Shown here piece after piece: positions 52,301 to 60,523 of a stretch of 64,000 nucleotides of DNA (position 1 is its first letter; each line of letters opens with the position of its first letter). Made by a program: the position numbers and the translations under genes. The notes under the pieces were generated by a model, which did not search any database, was not told the DNA's origin, and saw nothing but the letters and a program-made list of their open reading frames with translations. The stretch comes from Lepidodermella squamata (taxonomy: Eukaryota; Animalia; Gastrotricha). The stretch lies in assembly GCA_047495785.1 (NCBI GenBank), contig JBLDXI010000024.1:2480001-2544000 (forward strand), written 5' to 3'.

Positions 52301-55300
52301 TTCAGTAATTCTGGGGCGAGTTTGATGTCGCATGTTGGATTCAGGTTTTACACGAAAGATCGAGATACATCGGCGAACTGTTCGAAGGTTTATACGGGTG
52401 GATGGTGGTACTTCACCAATGCTGAATGCTACCGTGCGAAATTAACAGGGTCAGTGAAAATTATTGAAAATCGAAAATTTCAAAATTTAATTCAATTTTA
52501 ATTTTGAAATTTGATTTTTGATAAAATTGGAAAATTCAAAATTTATTTCAATTTCAAATTTCAAATTTCACAAATTTCACAAATTAAAATAAAAAAATGT
52601 GGGTTTAAAAAATTTAAAGTTCACAATTTAAGTTGTGTTTCTGTTGCTCGCTGTAGAATGCAACTTCTGAATTCTTCGACCAAGGGAATCATATCCCGAG
52701 ATTTTCGAGATTTCCAACCACTATCTATCGCTAAAATGATGCTGAGAAGATCGAATCCGACAACTGAGCTACCTTTGAAACGCCCTTCAAATGCCTTCCC
52801 AGTTGATTGCCAAGATATTTTGAATTCAAATCCATCTGCTTCGAATGGAATTTATCAAATTTATCCAGTTGGAACTGTCAATTCTATCGATGTTTACTGC
52901 GATATGGCAGCCTTAGGTGGGGGCTGGATTGTGATTCAGCGACGAATTTTCGAAAATCCCAATGAAGACTTCAACAAAACTTGGGCAGAATACGAAAATG
53001 GCTTTGGGTCGATTAGCGGATCATTCTATCTTGGAAATTCAAAAATCTTTGACCTAACTTCCTCAGCAAGTGGGAGCGTTACTTATCAATTAGCTGTCAA
53101 ACTTGAAAGACAAAGTGGGGAGAAAATCGCAAATATTTACTCGAAATTTCGACTGGGAAATCGCCAAAATTACTCAATTGAAATATCAGGGTTTCAGAAC
53201 TTTTCAAATATCGCTGGAGATGGCTTATCTGAATTGAACGGATCAGCTTTCGAAACCTGGGATAAAGGTGGCAATTGCGCAAAAATTCGATCAGGCGGCT
53301 GGTGGTTCCGCTCTGGATCTAACTCCTGCTCGAATTCAAACTTGAACGGTGACTTTGAGGCTACTACGGCGACGAATGGCATGTTATGGCCGGGGATAAC
53401 AGGAAATTATCAAGCTTACCGATCTGTGACAATGATGATAAAGCCTTCGAGTATGAAGCTTTCTTAAAATACAATAAATAAGGGACATTTCTATTCCATA
53501 GGTCTAGTCAAGCCTATAGATTGCAGCCAGATATTGGAAACGTGTCCCGGCAGCATTTCAGTGGCATATTGGATTTTCCCTTTTGGTACTCGGCCTATTC
53601 AAACCTACTGCGATATGACAAGCAACATCGGAAGCCTGGGAAAAGGCTGGACGGTAAGGTCAGGTTTCTTCATTCTTCGAGAGACACTTAATCAGGAAAT
53701 TTTAGACTATTGTTCGAAGCAATAGTAGCTTCAGAAAAACTTGGTTAGATTTCGAAACAGGTTTCTCGGACCTTCTTATCGATAATCAGGGAAATTTGTG
53801 GCTTGGAAATTTGAATCTTCATACAATCACCAAGTACTCGAGTTATTCCCTGCTAATTCGAGTCAAAGATCTTGCCAATACGCTGAAATCAGTTGTGTAC
53901 TCGAATTTCGCTGTAGCTGGTTCAAATCGGAAATATTTGATCACTGTATCAAACTTTACGGATATCGGAGCCGGAGATTTGTTGAGTGGAGTTGACCAGC
54001 AACCATTTTCAGCTTTCGATCAACCATCTTTCGAGTGTTACTTACTGAAAAATCTTCAAGGTGGTTGGTGGTTTGATCAAAACTGCACAAATTCGAGTCC
54101 CATGAGCGGTATTCCAAGTCTATATCTATCTATTGAAATGCTAATCAAGCGAACAAGTAATAAATTGAAAAAATTCTGTGAAGCCAATTATTTAATTTGA
54201 CTTTTAGACACTCTGTCCTTTGATAAATTTACGGGGCAATCCATCGATTCTACTGAACTTTTATCATCACCTATTCGGTTGATTGAGAACAAGTGTAGAG
54301 AAGGCTATTCGAAAAGTTCCGGCGATTCCCTCCAACTAAGCGACTTGAATTTTGTCGGAAAATGGCTTTGGGAACCTTTGGAATGTGAAGGTAAGGACTT
54401 CATCATAACTCATTTCATTTTTCACGGAAACTTTTCCAGCCTCTTGTTACAGTATTGGCGATTGTGCAAATAATGGAACCTGTTTGAAGCCTAATCAGTG
54501 CGTTTGCCCGTCTGGTTGGGCTGGATCGAATTGTTCGATTCCTAGCTGTCTCATGATCGGAAACTGTCAGAATGCAGGCACATGCAATGGCCCTAATAAC
54601 TGCTCATGTACAGCTGACTGGATCGGAACAAACTGCTCCGAACCTAACTGCAACGGCATTGGTGGTTGTAACAACAACGGGACCTGTATCTCTCCAAACC
54701 ATTGCCTTTGCCCTCAAGGCTGGTCAGGGTCCAATTGCTCGATAGGTGAATTTTATAAGTACCTCAACATTGGATGATCTGTCATTTTTTAATTATTTTT
54801 TCAGCTAATTGTACAACCATTGGGGATTGCCAAAATGGGGGATTTTGTGCGAAGCCGGATTCCTGTGAATGTTCAGACGGCTGGTTTGGTCTCAACTGCC
54901 AGCTTGCGAATTGTTCTGGTATCGGAACTTGCCTTAATGGCGGCAACTGTACGGCACCAAATACTTGTGAATGCCCAGAAGGTTGGTTAGGTCCTAATTG
55001 TGGCGAAGCTGATTGTTCAAACATCGGAAATTGCCAAAATGGAGGTAGTTGTATCGGCCCATCGTCCTGCCAATGCCCGAGTCACTCAACCGGAACGAAT
55101 TGTTCGATTTTGATTGAAACTACTACTACTTCTACAACTGATACTACTACTACCACTACTACAACTACTACTGCTGCTGCTACTACTACTGAGCCTACAA
55201 CCTTCCCTGTAACTTCAACCATAGGTTACGGGACTACTTTGGCTTCAGCTAATACTACTGAATCGACGCTTGGAACTCCACCTAATTTTAGCCTCGAATT

Positions 55301-58300
55301 AAGCACTCAGATTGCTTCAAGTGGAGCGACTGCTGCTCACATTGTTCCGACTACCCCGCCGGCCTCTAGTTCCATCAAGAGGAATCCTGTTCTAACAATG
55401 AAAGAGGCCATTGCTTTATCCGATCTGAACTTCAGCGATTCAATCGATGCTATCAATTCAATGGTCGCCTCGACATCAAAGCAAATTCTAATCAAACCAG
55501 CTACATCCTCAGATTTGATTAAATCGATGGTAAGCTTTTCTGATATGATATCAGAATTTTAGGTGGATAGGTAATTTTTCAGGTCGAATTCATGGCAGAG
55601 CTTAGCAAGATATCATATCGAGCCCTTCAACTTACAAATGACTATTCTGAAGCTCAGGCGAAAAATATCACTGAAGGTACTTTCAACCGTCCTAATTTTA
55701 AAATTATATCCTAATTTCTTTAGGATACCTATCTGCTGCGGATGAAGTAATGGCTATTGCATGCAATGGAACGAGCTTCGAATCTGCTACAGTTGGAATT
55801 GGAATCCCGAAGAATTGCGTCAAACCTGAACCTCTTGACGAGCTGGAGAGTGTAGCCCTAAAGCTCACCCTTTCACAGTCCGATGCTTTGAACTCAAATT
55901 TAACCGCCATTGTCGAGAATTTGTCGAATCTCCTACGTCCTAAGCTTTCCATTGGCCAAAGTTTCGAGTTCAATGGGAAATTCATGTCAGCTTCGATAAG
56001 GTCCATTAGCTTGAAAGCAGTTCCCGGGCTTCGTATTCAGACGAATCTTGTCGGGGTTGAGTTTCCGATGATTCAAGGTCCGTTATTTCTGATAACTGCC
56101 CAACAAAGGTCATCAATGAGTTCTGAATCTAAGGTTACCGTAATTCTGGTCGGATTTATTGCTAATGTCCTCCAGACCACTAATCCTTTCAACTTGCCCA
56201 CGATATCGGTAAAGATTCTGAATGAAAATGGAACCAAATTAATCCTGAACCCAATCAAACCAATTCGATTGATTGGAAGGCCTGATATGAGAAAAGCTCG
56301 CTCGTTGTCATCGGAGGTTATCGAAGCTCAGTGTGACATTAGCACCGTGAAATGTGACCTTGAAACAAATGCTGATCGCTTGGCTCTGTTGACTACGTTT
56401 CAAATTTTGCCAAAATACGGCGATTTTCTGCTGAACTTTCCAAGAAGTGATCTGGCTTACGAGGTTTACCTATCTTTCCGGATAGTTCCAACTCCGCGGA
56501 ATTTCAGCTGGAAGTTTCGGGTAGAAAAGTCCAACTTCTCTGCGATATCTATGAATCTGACCCATGAAAATCCGATTTCGAGTTACGAGAATTCTACTGG
56601 AAAGTTTCGCCTGCTATTCCAACGATCGATTTTCGAAAAGCTCTCAAAATCGATTTTGAAACTCTACGTGGTCACGAAACCTGTCTTGACCCAATTTTCG
56701 CCAATCGACGACCTTCCAAGCTCAGCTTGTCGACCAATCAGTTGCTATGGATTTCATGTGAAAATCAACCAAGCTGTAATACCTGATGATCTTCGGCGTA
56801 AACGAGAGGTTGACCTATCATCAGATGCTTCGAAAGAAGGCTTCGAGCTGGAACCTAACTCTTCAGAATCGGAGATAGCCTTCAAATCGAAATATTTCGG
56901 CGATTTCGGAATGGACCTAGTCATTTTGCCGAATACTATCGAATTTTCTTATGTTTTCGCAAATTTCACATCATTGGTCGCCAATAATTATGCAGTTCTT
57001 GCTGCTCAAGTAACGGCCGTCGCTTTCTTCATCATTGCAGTTGGATTCACGATAAAGTTCGATAAAGCTGATCTGAAAGCGGTAATTTCAAGCTGTATTC
57101 CGATGTCCACGCCATTATTTTTTATTTTTAGTGGGCTTTTCTACCACTGAAAGGGAATCTAGCGAGCCACACAGCGAAGTACCTGGTTTCAATTACTCAT
57201 TATGGGGTCAAGAAATATCATCTCAAGCCAACAATTTGTTTGAGAATAGTTGGAGATACTCACGAGACGAAATGGTTGGTACTTGATGACGGTGAACGGA
57301 AGGTTGGAAGAATTAATTTCCAATTATTTTTGTAAAGCTGATTTCTTTTAAGAATTTCGATGGAAAAAGACCGGCAAATTTTGCTGTTACGAGCTTGCTG
57401 AATTTAGGCCGGCTTGAGAGTTCAGAAATTACCTTGATCGAACCTGCGAATCAAGATGGGATGAAAGATCGATTTGAGATGGTTCTTGATAGAATTATCA
57501 TCCTAGATACGCAAACTGGCGATAAGTAAGGAATACAGAATTTCGAATAACCCAAGCCTTACTCATTTATTAAAATTTCAGGTTCACTTTTTTAGGAAAT
57601 CGACGTCTCAAAACTGGGGATTCCGTCACCTTGTCACTTGCTAAGGAGGATGAGGTTAAAGGGTTCCGATATTTGTTGATCAGCCACTCTCGGGGTGGCA
57701 TTTACGAATCTCATCCATGGCTATCTATCGCCAGTCGACCCTTGCCTAGCAACTGGACCCGAACAGAGCGTTTAGCTTGTGTTGTATCCGCCTTATATCT
57801 CGCTATGTTAGTAAACGCAATGTTCTACGGCCTCGAATCGAATTCACCAAGAGTTGGAGTGAAAGTTGGGACATTCTTCCGAATATCTTGGTTCACTCTA
57901 TGGACAAGTGTCATCGGTTCAGCAATCATCATTCCGCCGACTGCGATTATGGCTTTGATTTTCAAAAGGGTGAAACGACGATCGGCTGAGCTCAGCGAAT
58001 GGGAAACTGCTTTGAAGCTGAACTTGGAAAAGTGCCAAAAAGCAGATCCTGAAGCTAAGAAGAAACCATTCCAACTACCTTGGCCTTGCGTTTTCATCGG
58101 ATGGTTTCGTAAGTTCCTTTCTAAACTACTAAATACTAAATATTTCATTACTATGGAATTTAGTCGTCGGTTTTTGTATCACGGTCTCTTGCGTATTCAT
58201 AACACTGTACAGCTTATCATGGGGGAAGGAGAAGTCTCTTCAGTGGCTCACTGGAATCGTCATACACGTCATTCAAGACATCATCCTAATTCAATCAATC

Positions 58301-60523
58301 AAAGTTGGCTTCCTATCTCTGTTCAGCTCCGGTCTTCTCAAACTACCAGATGATGGCTTGAATGTTGGGAAGCAAGTGTTTTCTGAGAGCAGCGATAAAC
58401 CTCGGACTGAACTGTTCCTGCGATGCCGAGGGATGTTCTTAGGGCTGTTTCACCACTTTCTTCTGGTTACAGCTTTCGCTTTGGTCATCAACACAATTCA
58501 AAATCCTTACGCCAATCTCCAAGTGAAAGCCCTTCAACCAATTCTTAAAGTCAAAGGCGTGAAGATGTTTGACGATGTGGTAAGGGTTCAGTATCTAATA
58601 TCATGCTACACCTCTTCCATTGAATCCCCCGCTATAGATATTAGATCATGGACAGATATTTGACTGGCTCAACTCTACTTTGCTACCAAACTTAACAGAT
58701 GGCAATCAACTCGCTTACGGGGGCGCTTTCAGAAGTAGGCACCGATGAAGATGTTACTTTTAGTTTTTAGTTTGGATTTCGGTCTATTTTTAGGGCGGAA
58801 CTTTTACAAAATATGGAATCACGAGGTAGCTCTATTGGGCCCTATCCGACTTCGACAACAGCGACTACGAAATGGTTTGTAAAACTTCATCATCATAGCC
58901 AATCTATCTCAACTTTAATTTTAATAATTCATAGCAACCTGTCCAGTCCTCGAATCGGTCAATAAAAAAGCCATTCCAAAAAATCTAATGAACATATTGG
59001 CTTCTGAGACGAAGTGCCACGCTGCAAGACAAGGAAGTAACCAAGCCTTGGAAAGAGGATCCTATCAATCGAGCTGGTCTGCCCCCAGCTCGAAAGATTT
59101 CACCTTTCTGAAGCAAAACCTCTCAATCGAAGAGGCGCCTTGGGTCTACAGAGGAGCCGAGGGAATTCCATACATGGGGCAAGAATCTGACTATTCCACC
59201 GGCGGTTACTACATCGATTTACCATTCAAGCTGTCAGATGCAAGAGCGGTGGTTCAAAGTCTAAAGAAGTCACGTTGGATCGATGAGATGACGTTGGCCG
59301 TTTTTATCGATTTGGTAGTGTACAACGCTCAGACAAATTTATTCGTCACGGTGAAGGTGGCTTTCGAGGCCTTAGAAACCGGTGGCATGACGTATCACAC
59401 GAGAATCAGTCCTTTGAATATGTACGTATATTCAGGCGCTAGTTCCTTGCCAGCTTTTGTAATACAAGGGCTGTGGATCGTGGTCCTCATGGCTACGATT
59501 GGTAAATTGGCTTACAAAATCAAAAAGCAAGGCCTCTCGAACTTCAAGAACGATGGTTGGAACTTGCTTGAAGTCTGTCAGGTTGTCATCTCACTGTTAA
59601 TTGTCGCTCTCTTCGCTGCTAGACTTGAGATCATCATAAAAACCATTACGAAATATCAAAATGACAAGTCCAGTTTCCTGAACTTGGATCTTTTAGCCAA
59701 TTGGGAGGAATTGATGGCCAATCTGTATGGCATCGCGTTTTTTCTCACTATGATGCTATTTTTCCGGCATTTAACCTCCAACAAACATTGGGCTATCGTT
59801 GTCGGGACTCTGTCAAAAGGGAAACAAGATTTGATCTCATTCATGGGCATTTTTCTTACTTTGACTCTGATATTTTCCACGGTCGGGTATTTGGCGATTG
59901 GGTCGAGGTTGGTGGAATTTAAATCTTTCACAGCTTCAGTACTGACACTGCTTCAAAACACGCTGGGAGTTTCGAGGGAATTATTGGGCCTTGGAGCTAC
60001 TTCTCGTTTTGTTTTGATTTTCAGCCTAGGCTACTCATCCCTTGTCATGTTTTTGTCAGTTCAAATGTTCATGACCATCATTGCGGTAACATATGGGTTG
60101 GTGGGCAGTGACATTGAGACATATACAGAGTGGGATGAAGAGCTAGCAAACTACATGTCTGAAGAGTGGTCTGAATTCAAGAAAGGATTCAACCGGACCG
60201 AATCAAAGGTTCATGAAGAAATAGATCGTAAAGAATCGGGTGACACATTCCATCGGCTGGATAAAGTCGTGGATCGATTGGTCAACTCTGAAACTAAGGA
60301 ATGTGCGAAGAACGAGCGATTTGTCAAGGCGATGGAGGAACAGGTTGTTGTCAAGCCGAAAGTAGGCTCGAAAGATGGAAATTTCTTCGGCCAAACGTAT
60401 GCGTGGACGACACAGCGAATAACAAATGCCGTTCTCGTCAAAAAGTCCATATACAGAACCCATCAAAAACTGGAACTACGCAAATCAGTCTATTCGGATG
60501 TTCTGTCTCCTTATCAAGCCTGA
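46352..60523 (+). CDS. Giant polycystin-1-like (PKD1L/REJ-type) receptor-channel, ~30 exons, roughly 4,000 aa: SP-EGF-6xCTL-2xF5/8C-EGF-F5/8C-EGF-3xFReD-6xEGF-Thr-rich stalk-GAIN/GPS-like-TM-PLAT-TMs-TOP-channel
   Basis: The reading frame was followed by eye across consecutive GT-AG introns with no stop. Polycystin hallmarks include PNTIEF before TM1, PLAT, HPWLSI..RP..SNWTRTERL, LLGPIRLRQQR and SRWIDEMTLAVF. FReD motifs include YCEMD..GGGWT, FWLGNE and GGWW. Confidence 0.85.
55118..55190 (+). repeat. (ACT)n-rich coding microsatellite encoding a poly-Thr mucin-like stalk
   Basis: actactactact... encodes ETTTTSTTDTTTTTTTTTTAAATTT. Confidence 0.8.

What the first reader, a model, noticed from the sequence alone, without database searches (positions are those of the whole stretch)
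56740..56940. GPS autoproteolysis site appears dead and replaced by a furin site at the same place
Seen: just before PNTIEF and TM1 the sequence reads SCYGF...DDL-RRKR-EVDLSSDASKEGFELEPNSSESEIAFKSKYFGDFG. Established: the GPS consensus is C.(F/Y)W...W...GC...C.C.HL|(T/S).F. Here the spacing is recognisable, but the later Cys and Trp residues are gone and H-L-T/S is replaced by Y-F-G. An ideal R-X-K-R proprotein-convertase site (56794-56805) is inserted in the motif. Inference: self-cleavage has been swapped for furin cleavage, which would still release the ectodomain but expose a different, longer stalk peptide.
Basis: partly seen in the sequence, partly recalled or inferred. Interest (0 to 1): 0.75.

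Follow-up and report, generated by a model that had tools for sequence, protein, structure and literature searches.

The report
Dead self-cleavage site, conserved furin motif
A polycystin-1-like receptor/channel gene of an unidentified invertebrate keeps the fold of its self-cutting juxtamembrane (GAIN) domain but cannot cut itself; a furin-type R-x-K/R-R motif is kept in a floppy loop two strands upstream in all 37 genome copies checked, so a secretory protease probably makes the cut, though no cleavage has been shown.

Summary
The exon at 55724-57081 encodes a GAIN-like domain plus TM1 of a polycystin-1-like gene. RRKR is at 56794-56805. Y-F-G at 56893-56901 sits exactly where H-L-T sits in canonical relatives.

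The domain is GAIN-like by fold: the top five PDB matches are all GAIN domains, Z 10.7-9.1. All GPS cysteines, tryptophans, the histidine and the nucleophile are gone.

The R-x-[KR]-R motif is the one invariant island in the most variable, low-confidence loop. It occurs once per exon, at the same place, in 37/37 paralogues and 4/4 foreign clusters. P4 and P1 are always Arg (five codons each), P2 is K or R, and P3 is free. Furin-type convertase genes exist in the genome, and other genes there keep canonical HLT sites.

- The motif is not at the old site but 29 residues (two strands) upstream, next to a deleted W..W hairpin.
- HLT loss is older than this family. Lingula and Lineus relatives (F-F-G) carry RRLL, the optimal S1P motif, in the homologous loop.

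Cleavage itself is untested. The scan noted the same thing repeatedly on paralogues in this genome.

The parts
55724..57081 (+). Exon encoding the GAIN-like domain (subdomain B with an inserted beta-sandwich), the stalk and TM1; in frame from 55726 (452 codons)
   Evidence: Splice sites read; translation; aligns to P0001 residues 118-526 by tblastn; fold
56743..56772 (+). Predicted beta-strand C340-Q349 that precedes the loop; G342 is invariant and Y/F343 and H344 nearly so
   Evidence: DSSP of the model; conservation
56776..56841 (+). Variable, charged loop (residues 351-372), pLDDT under 50 for 352-369; it takes the place of the deleted C-x-[FY]-W..W..G-C hairpin
   Evidence: pLDDT; column entropy 1.3-2.8 bits except at the motif; deletion
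56794..56805 (+). R357-R-K-R360, furin-type R-x-[KR]-R motif; predicted scissile bond after 56805 (R360|E361)
   Evidence: Invariant P4 and P1 Arg in 37/37 paralogues and 4/4 foreign clusters; P2 is K or R; P3 is free; five Arg codons each at P4 and P1
56842..56889 (+). Two predicted strands (F373-L375, I384-S388) that would stay on the C-terminal fragment
   Evidence: DSSP of the models
56893..56901 (+). Y390-F391-G392, the position of H-L-T/S in canonical GPS; no base and no nucleophile; G392 is invariant
   Evidence: Gapless register with P0012, P0043 and P0045; invariance
56899..56946 (+). Last GAIN strand and stalk (G392...P402-N-T-I-E-F407), the equivalent of the polycystin-1 / aGPCR tethered-agonist strand
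   Evidence: HMMER hits to PKD1-like stalks over residues 365-451; strands 392-399 and 403-408 in the model
56989..57078 (+). TM1 (predicted helix 422-451)
57082..57131 (+). 50-nt intron (GT...AG), phase 0
   Evidence: Read from the sequence; tblastn exon ends
57132..57302 (+). Start of the PLAT-like first cytoplasmic loop
   Evidence: tblastn to P0001 residues 529-585; P0001 500-700 aligns to the Pfam-PLAT region of Lingula P0008, E 3e-24; Pfam itself finds no PLAT in the window pieces
58988..60520 (+). Polycystin domain and PKD cation-channel domain of the same gene
   Evidence: Pfam PF20519 1.7e-22 and PF08016 8.1e-22
53796..55559 (+). Upstream ectodomain exons: fibrinogen-C, EGF repeats, Thr-rich mucin-like stretch
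   Evidence: Pfam PF00147 and EGF families; ORF translations

Best explanation
The gene encodes a polycystin-1-like 11-TM receptor/channel. Its juxtamembrane GAIN-type domain still folds but cannot cleave itself: Tyr replaces the His base, Gly replaces the Thr/Ser nucleophile, and both disulfides and both Trp of the GPS motif are gone. A furin-type proprotein-convertase site (R357-R-K-R360|E) is kept under purifying selection in a disordered, acidic and Ser-rich loop 29 residues upstream. The proposed mechanism is inferred, not shown. A furin-like convertase in the late secretory pathway would cut after R360. The lectin-rich N-terminal fragment and the membrane fragment would then stay joined non-covalently, because the membrane fragment contributes the last three strands of the GAIN sandwich. 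This would recreate the two-piece, force-separable state that canonical polycystin-1 reaches by autoproteolysis, but with a stalk about 31 residues longer. Shown here: the motif and its conservation pattern, the GAIN fold, the low-confidence loop, convertase genes in the genome, and canonical GPS sites elsewhere in the genome. Inferred: the cleavage, the association of the fragments, and any signalling role.
For: Fold: the trimmed model (pLDDT 77.9, pTM 0.78) has GAIN domains as its top five matches among 48,161 chains: CD97 Z 10.7 and 9.9, CELSR1 9.9, Gpr126 9.9, BAI3 9.1. GPR110, latrophilin-3, GPR56 and GPR97 follow at Z 6.6-7.5. The full-exon model gives the same picture. Register: H-L-T corresponds to Y390-F391-G392. 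Motif: there is one R-x-[KR]-R per exon, always 25-30 residues before Y-F-G. P4 is R in 30/30 (5 codons), P1 is R in 30/30 (5 codons), P2 is K13/R17, P3 is K/R/L/S/Y/G, and P1' is D/S/E. Seven more divergent copies also have it, as do the foreign clusters P0001-P0004 at 24-38% identity. R357 and R360 have zero entropy inside a loop with 1.3-2.8 bits per column, across 10 lineages below 60% identity. Chance expectation is 0.0015 per loop. No Lys ever occurs at P1 or P4 while P2 swaps K and R, which matches the prototypical furin sequence R-X-(K/R)-R (PMC8310232). Loop 352-369 has pLDDT under 50 in both models. Enzyme: at least 8 P-domain loci exist; L031 has S8, P domain and a Cys-rich region, with best named hits PCSK5/6/furin. 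Control: 16 canonical GPS hits in the same genome keep C-x-C-x-H-L-T, and only 1 of 15 canonical sequences has R-x-[KR]-R within 120 residues upstream.
Against: The split-chain complex test gave no verdict. Loop exposure rests on low pLDDT, not on a solved structure. All copies descend from one ancestor, so the link between the dead GPS and the basic motif is a single evolutionary event, not repeated co-occurrence. The Foldseek matches were weak (BAI3 probability 0.96-0.98 but TM 0.21-0.25), so fold membership rests on the VIA-align Z-scores. Human PKD1L1 and PKDREJ lack H-L-T/S and are listed as the exceptions that are not GPS-cleaved (PMC9672506), so a dead GPS does not by itself call for a replacement cut.
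Confidence: 0.55

Rival explanations
1. The motif is a real convertase site, but cleavage simply sheds the lectin-rich ectodomain or matures the protein. In this reading the ectodomain (fibrinogen, EGF and C-type lectin style) is released as a soluble factor, rather than forming a stable GAIN-type two-piece receptor.
For: The same motif and loop evidence as for the best explanation. The ectodomain has innate-immune-style binding domains (scan note s1-402002). The split-chain test gave no support for association, which is not evidence either way.
Against: In the models the residues after the cut form three strands that are part of the GAIN sandwich. Cleaved SEA and GAIN domains are known to stay associated after cleavage (PMC6954182). 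The stalk residues F394, G395, L398, P402, I405 and F407 are as conserved as in canonical polycystins.
Confidence: 0.2
2. The motif is not cleaved. It is kept for another reason, such as a basic patch that pairs with the acidic run that follows it, binds a sulfated glycan or partner, or is needed for folding or export of the degenerate GAIN domain.
For: There is no direct evidence of cleavage. The motif is always followed by an acidic, Ser-rich stretch. Uncleaved GAIN domains function in PKD1L1, PKDREJ and CELSR1 (PMC9672506; 8vy2).
Against: A charge patch would tolerate Lys at P1 and P4 and shifts of register. Instead P1 and P4 are Arg in 41 of 41 sequences, P2 swaps K and R, and P3 is free, which is the furin subsite pattern. 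The motif sits in the least ordered loop. Related proteins carry another convertase-family motif (RRLL) in the homologous loop.
Confidence: 0.2
3. The finding is chance or decay: the window copy is a degenerating paralogue and RRKR is a fortuitous basic run.
For: The window copy is the most divergent paralogue (34-41% identity to the others). Pfam finds no GPS, REJ or PLAT in it.
Against: The reading frame is open through all exons aligned to P0001 residues 118-1507. The motif is invariant in 41 sequences against an expectation of 0.0015 per loop. Synonymous codon turnover at the Arg positions shows selection at the protein level.
Confidence: 0.02

Closest known systems
Polycystin-1, PKD1L2, PKD1L3 and sea-urchin suREJ3 (GPS autoproteolysis in a GAIN domain before TM1)
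   Same: Same family architecture: ectodomain, GAIN-type domain, stalk, TM1, PLAT-like loop, polycystin domain and PKD channel. The stalk aligns without gaps to canonical C-x-C-x-H-L-T-x-F-G...P-N-x-I-D-F sequences. Canonical copies exist in the same genome.
   Different: The His base, the Thr/Ser nucleophile, four Cys and two Trp are all absent, and about 22-27 residues of the GPS motif are deleted. A furin-type motif sits in the adjoining loop.
PKD1L1 and PKDREJ (polycystin-1 paralogues without the H-L-T/S tripeptide, not GPS-cleaved; PMC9672506)
   Same: They are polycystin-1 family members with a dead GPS.
   Different: The review describing them does not mention furin at all (0 occurrences). 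Here an invariant R-x-[KR]-R accompanies the dead site in every copy.
SEA-fold juxtamembrane domains: Mucin-1 (autoproteolysis) versus Notch-2 S1 and human GPR126 (furin) (PMC6954182)
   Same: This is the functional precedent: one fold cut either by itself or by furin, with the halves staying together until force separates them.
   Different: The fold is different (SEA alpha/beta sandwich versus GAIN). In SEA both cuts fall in the same loop; here the furin motif is two strands upstream of the old autoproteolytic turn. The source paper calls SEA and GAIN the only domains known to be proteolysed and stay associated, and describes furin cleavage for SEA only.
Cleavage-resistant adhesion-GPCR GAIN domains (CELSR1, ADGRB2, ADGRB3)
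   Same: They have the GAIN fold without efficient self-cleavage, and flexible, poorly conserved flaps and loops around the GPS. CELSR1 and BAI3 are among the best structural matches.
   Different: Those keep the GPS disulfides and mostly the motif, and no convertase site in the GAIN loop is described. They are 7-TM receptors, not 11-TM polycystins.
Lophotrochozoan 'polycystic kidney disease protein 1-like 2' proteins with F-K-S-N-F-F-G (Lingula anatina XP_013397161.1 and XP_013386761.2; Lineus longissimus; Owenia fusiformis)
   Same: These are the nearest named relatives. They too lack H-L-T and all GPS Cys. A branch with 100/99 support separates them, together with the window family, from H-L-T sequences. 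Six of nine carry R-R-L-L in the loop that aligns with the R-x-K-R loop.
   Different: They keep the W..W hairpin. Their motif is the S1P/SKI-1 type (R-X-aliphatic-Z, optimal RRLL; PMC8310232), not the furin type. Pfam recognises their PLAT.

Membership tests
Polycystin-1-like (PKD1-like, 11-TM TRPP-related) proteins | Polycystin domain plus PKD cation-channel domain at the C-terminal end | tested here: met
   PF20519 1.7e-22 and PF08016 8.1e-22 on window:58988-60520
Polycystin-1-like (PKD1-like, 11-TM TRPP-related) proteins | GAIN-type domain immediately before TM1 | tested here: met
   The top five structural matches are all GAIN domains, Z 10.7-9.1, with 133-150 residues aligned; a TM helix follows at 422-451
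Polycystin-1-like (PKD1-like, 11-TM TRPP-related) proteins | PLAT/LH2 domain in the first cytoplasmic loop | tested here: inconclusive
   Pfam PLAT was not detected in the window pieces or in P0001. However, P0001 500-700 aligns to the PLAT region of Lingula P0008 at E 3e-24, and the window exon 57132-57302 aligns to P0001 529-585
Autoproteolytic GAIN/GPS domain (PF01825 motif) | H-L-T/S triad (His base at -2, Thr/Ser/Cys nucleophile at +1) | tested here: not met
   Y390-F391-G392 in the gapless register with canonical sequences; G392 is invariant in 31/31
Autoproteolytic GAIN/GPS domain (PF01825 motif) | GPS sequence motif: four Cys (two disulfides) and two Trp; Pfam GPS match | tested here: not met
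   No PF01825 hit at E up to 0.1. The alignment shows that the C-x-[FY]-W..W..G-C hairpin is deleted and that C-x-C is replaced by F-K-S
Autoproteolytic GAIN/GPS domain (PF01825 motif) | GAIN subdomain-B beta-sandwich fold ending in the buried last strand | tested here: met
   strands 384-388 and 392-399 are separated by a 3-residue turn at K-Y-F
Furin / basic proprotein-convertase substrates | R-X-(K/R)-R consensus with Arg at P1 and P4 | tested here: met
   RRKR at 357-360; the pattern is conserved in 41/41 sequences; consensus as stated in PMC8310232
Furin / basic proprotein-convertase substrates | Site in an accessible, flexible segment on the luminal/extracellular side | tested here: inconclusive
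   pLDDT is under 50 for 352-369 in two models, and the site lies N-terminal to TM1 behind EGF and fibrinogen domains. This is a prediction only
Furin / basic proprotein-convertase substrates | A furin-type convertase is encoded by the organism | tested here: met
   At least 8 PF01483 loci over cut-off; L031 has S8 (1.2e-39) plus P domain (3.9e-28) plus a Cys-rich tail, with hits to PCSK5/6/furin
Furin / basic proprotein-convertase substrates | Demonstrated cleavage after P1 Arg | not testable with these tools

The most novel reading that the evidence does not exclude
A whole lophotrochozoan clade of polycystin-1-like proteins gave up GAIN autoproteolysis early and handed the cut to secretory-pathway convertases acting on one homologous loop. 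The protease then changed between lineages: an S1P/SKI-1-type R-R-L-L site in brachiopod and nemertean proteins, and a furin-type R-x-K/R-R site in the expanded family of this genome after deletion of the W..W hairpin. If so, GAIN would join SEA as a fold that works either as a self-cutting or as a protease-cut, force-separable joint.
Probability: 0.3. Interest if true: 0.75.

Novelty: new variant of a known kind. Interest (0 to 1): 0.6.

Why it matters
GAIN autoproteolysis is central to current models of polycystin-1 and adhesion-GPCR signalling: a two-piece receptor and a tethered agonist exposed when the pieces part. A natural family that keeps the fold and the stalk, has lost all catalytic residues and holds a convertase motif invariant in the adjoining loop poses a direct question. 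Is it the break in the chain, rather than the self-cutting chemistry, that selection preserves? The paper read on GPR126 describes furin cleavage for SEA domains only, not for GAIN (PMC6954182), and the full-text searches run here found no description of a furin-cut GAIN domain. The family also offers a construct in which cleavage could be switched on or off by an inhibitor or a point mutation without touching the GPS turn. That would help separate cleavage from folding effects. It also cautions annotators that 'GPS absent' does not mean 'single-chain'.

Tried and rejected
- **Pfam on the exon.** No family matched at E up to 0.1, and no PLAT was found in the short downstream exons.
- **Profile of the family against PDB sequences.** Only spurious MIF4G hits came back, at E 0.17.
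- **Foldseek against PDB.** It was uninformative for both models, apart from BAI3 GAIN at probability 0.96-0.98 with low TM. VIA-align gave the clear answer.
- **Word-index protein search with P0001 region 300-530.** It found only itself, so the family is nearly absent from named databases.
- **Complex prediction on the two would-be fragments (46-360 and 361-420).** No verdict: score 0.00, single-sequence folding, controls not run. This counts neither for nor against association.
- **Identity of the organism.** It was not established. The best named hits to its furin-like gene are only 36-57% identical and taxonomically scattered.
Rejected on the alignment.
- **Spliced protein model.** Exons were searched by reference only.
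Full report
**Context.** The window is eukaryotic DNA with introns of about 50 nt. The finding lies in a + strand exon, 55724-57081 (in frame from 55726; 452 codons).

The gene has this architecture:
- Upstream exons encode fibrinogen-C, EGF repeats and a Thr-rich stretch.
- The exon is followed by a 50-nt intron (57082-57131).
- Next comes a PLAT-like loop.
- A polycystin domain and PKD cation channel lie at 58988-60520 (Pfam 1.7e-22 and 8.1e-22).

tblastn of the full-length relative P0001 maps its residues 118-1507 onto 55855-60313 with open frames. The gene is therefore a polycystin-1-like 11-TM protein, not an adhesion GPCR.

**Observation.** RRKR is at 56794-56805, Y-F-G at 56893-56901 and PNTIEF at 56929-46, and a predicted TM helix spans 56989-57078.

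The register was tested rather than assumed. The exhaustive HMMER search returned PKD1-like stalks over residues 365-451. Among them is a canonical fragment, P0012, whose C-x-C-N-H-L-T-S-F-G...P-N-P-I-D-F aligns without gaps. This gives H-L-T = Y390-F391-G392. Without a His base or a hydroxyl/thiol nucleophile, the established cis-autoproteolysis mechanism cannot run. That last step is an inference from the known mechanism.

**What is lost.** I aligned the family with canonical relatives (Lineus P0043, Antedon P0045) and with F-F-G relatives. All four GPS Cys and both Trp are absent, and about 22-27 residues (the C-x-[FY]-W..W..G-C hairpin) are deleted. These alignments are at low identity and should be read with that caution.

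**The motif.**
- The genome (121 Mb) holds a large family. A six-frame search found 40 matches.
- In the 30 best loci there is exactly one R-x-[KR]-R per exon of roughly 400-450 codons, always 25-30 residues before Y-F-G (42 where an intron intervenes).
- P4 is Arg in 30/30 using 5 codons, and P1 is Arg in 30/30 using 5 codons.
- P2 is K13/R17. P3 is K, R, L, S, Y or G. P1' is D24/S4/E2.
- Seven further, more divergent or intron-split copies also carry it: RLKR, RKRR, RTKR, RYRR, RKRR, RSRR, RAKR.
- The only four foreign clusters with E below 1e-30 among 1.84 billion representatives have RRKRR, RKRR, RRKKR and KRRRR at the same place.
- In the 31-sequence alignment, R357 and R360 have zero entropy inside a loop whose other columns carry 1.3-2.8 bits, across ten lineages below 60% identity.
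- Composition predicts 0.0015 such motifs per loop.
- Never Lys at P1 or P4, free K/R at P2 and a free P3 is the prototypical furin pattern R-X-(K/R)-R (PMC8310232). It is not what a mere charge patch would give.

**Structure.** With the family alignment, AlphaFold2 gives pLDDT 73 and pTM 0.71 for the exon, and pLDDT 77.9 and pTM 0.78 for residues 75-420.

An all-against-48,161-chain structural search puts GAIN domains in the first five places for the trimmed model:
- CD97, Z 10.7 (134 residues aligned, rmsd 3.5) and 9.9
- CELSR1, Z 9.9
- Gpr126, Z 9.9
- BAI3, Z 9.1

GPR110, latrophilin-3, GPR56 and GPR97 follow at Z 6.6-7.5 (the same pattern appears). Foldseek was weak.

The only long low-confidence stretch inside the domain is 352-369, which holds the motif. 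After it come three strands (373-375, 384-388, 392-399) and the stalk. A cut after R360 would therefore leave three strands of the sandwich on the membrane fragment, and a stalk about 31 residues longer than after a GPS cut.

**Enzyme and controls.**
- The genome has at least eight convertase P-domain loci. One of them, L031, has the S8 catalytic domain, a P domain and a Cys-rich tail, and hits PCSK5/6/furin.
- The same genome keeps 16 canonical GPS motifs. Some are aGPCR-like (C-x-C-x-H-L-T-x-F-A-I-L-V) and some PKD1-like (C-F-C-N-H-L-T-S-F-G; C-L-C-T-H-L-T-S-F-G...P-N-A-I-D-F).
- Only 1 of 15 canonical sequences has R-x-[KR]-R within 120 residues upstream.
- The change is thus specific to this expanded family.

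**Wider context.** The nearest named relatives are 'polycystic kidney disease protein 1-like 2' proteins of Lingula, Lineus and Owenia.
- They too lack H-L-T and the Cys (F-K-S-N-F-F-G) but keep W..W.
- Six of nine carry R-R-L-L 46-50 residues before the turn, in the column block that aligns with R-x-K-R. The 20-odd residue difference in distance equals the deleted hairpin.
- R-R-L-L is the optimal SKI-1/S1P motif (PMC8310232).
- Two others have RVKR or RRRR further upstream.
- A 13-sequence tree (stalk to channel) separates the H-L-T sequences from F-F-G plus R-x-K-R sequences by a branch with 100/99 support. The root is unknown and branches are long.

Loss of H-L-T therefore seems older than the furin motif, and the loop may have been a convertase target throughout. 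This is inference.

**Mechanism proposed.** The domain folds without self-cleavage. A furin-type convertase cuts after R360 in the late secretory pathway. The fragments stay joined through the shared sandwich and separate under ligand-borne force. Only the sequence, fold, loop and enzyme-gene parts are shown; the rest is inferred.

**Known comparisons.**
- PKD1L1 and PKDREJ lack H-L-T/S and are listed as the family members that are not GPS-cleaved (PMC9672506).
- SEA domains are cut either by themselves (Mucin-1) or by furin (Notch-2, human GPR126), and the halves stay together. The same paper calls SEA and GAIN the only domains known to do so (PMC6954182).
- Cleavage-resistant aGPCR GAIN domains have flexible flaps and loops near the GPS (PMC13062082).
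- Full-text searches for polycystin + GPS + furin, and for GAIN domain + furin or proprotein convertase, found no description of a furin-cut GAIN domain.

**Limits.**
- The split-chain complex job gave no verdict.
- The organism is unidentified.
- Exons were never joined for any search.

**Earlier notes of the scan.** The same reading was noted many times on paralogues in this genome, and follow-up agents reached similar conclusions. One note (s1-430113) prompted me to look at paralogues. All claims above rest on my own calls. The parts added here are:
- the subsite and codon analysis;
- the canonical-GPS control in the same genome;
- the deleted hairpin and the corrected position of the motif;
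- the R-R-L-L motif in relatives;
- the tree.

Noticed in passing
P0008, P0015, P0016, P0017, P0038, P0040 (Lingula anatina, Lineus longissimus and one unnamed): Dead-GPS (F-F-G) PKD1L2-like proteins carry R-R-L-L, the optimal S1P/SKI-1 motif, 46-50 residues before the dead turn. It sits in the loop that aligns with the furin motif of the window family. Owenia P0018 has RVKR and P0039 has RRRR further upstream; P0042 has none.
   Followed up: partly
window 56306-56760 (about residues 195-345 of the exon): The GAIN subdomain B seems to carry an inserted beta-sandwich. This stretch matches SID1-family, pilin and tailspike sandwiches on its own (Z about 5.3-5.9), while the GAIN matches use the residues on either side of it.
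   Followed up: no
G000 contig C24, 4.17-4.64 Mb and 2.36-2.60 Mb (loci L002-L028); also contigs C9, C46, C66 and C3: The family has at least 37 copies, mostly in tandem arrays on the window's own contig. The window copy is the most divergent (34-41% identity to the rest).
   Followed up: partly
L059 (G000:C24:4273200-4273934, - strand); L029, L030, L062, L063: One copy has an in-frame stop just before the motif (K-V-*-F-A-K) and may be a pseudogene. Four other copies have a short intron inside or just after the loop, so intron positions differ between paralogues.
   Followed up: no
L036-L047 (G000 contigs C29, C12, C13, C15, C16, C103, C2, C9, C43): Canonical GPS motifs with H-L-T persist in the same genome, in adhesion-GPCR-like and PKD1-like genes. 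L036 (aGPCR-like) also has an RMKR within 120 residues upstream.
   Followed up: partly
L035 (ENA ERZ27333047, k141_63249), gene 1446-6344: The closest foreign relative, P0001 (1632 aa), is encoded by an uninterrupted 4899-nt ORF on a 14.6-kb assembly contig, next to an ankyrin-repeat gene. The window gene, by contrast, has several 50-nt introns.
   Followed up: no
model md1d38a52ccec (window 55948-56985): Besides GAIN domains, the fold search lists ZU5 domains (ankyrin, UNC5b; Z 6.7-7.4) and the Nup98 autoproteolytic domain (Z 5.1-5.3), along with axonemal doublet-microtubule proteins (Z 7.0-8.3).
   Followed up: no
window 56899-56910: G392 (the position of the lost nucleophile) and G395 are invariant in all 31 aligned sequences. 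This suggests that the tight turn and the first stalk residues are still structurally constrained.
   Followed up: no
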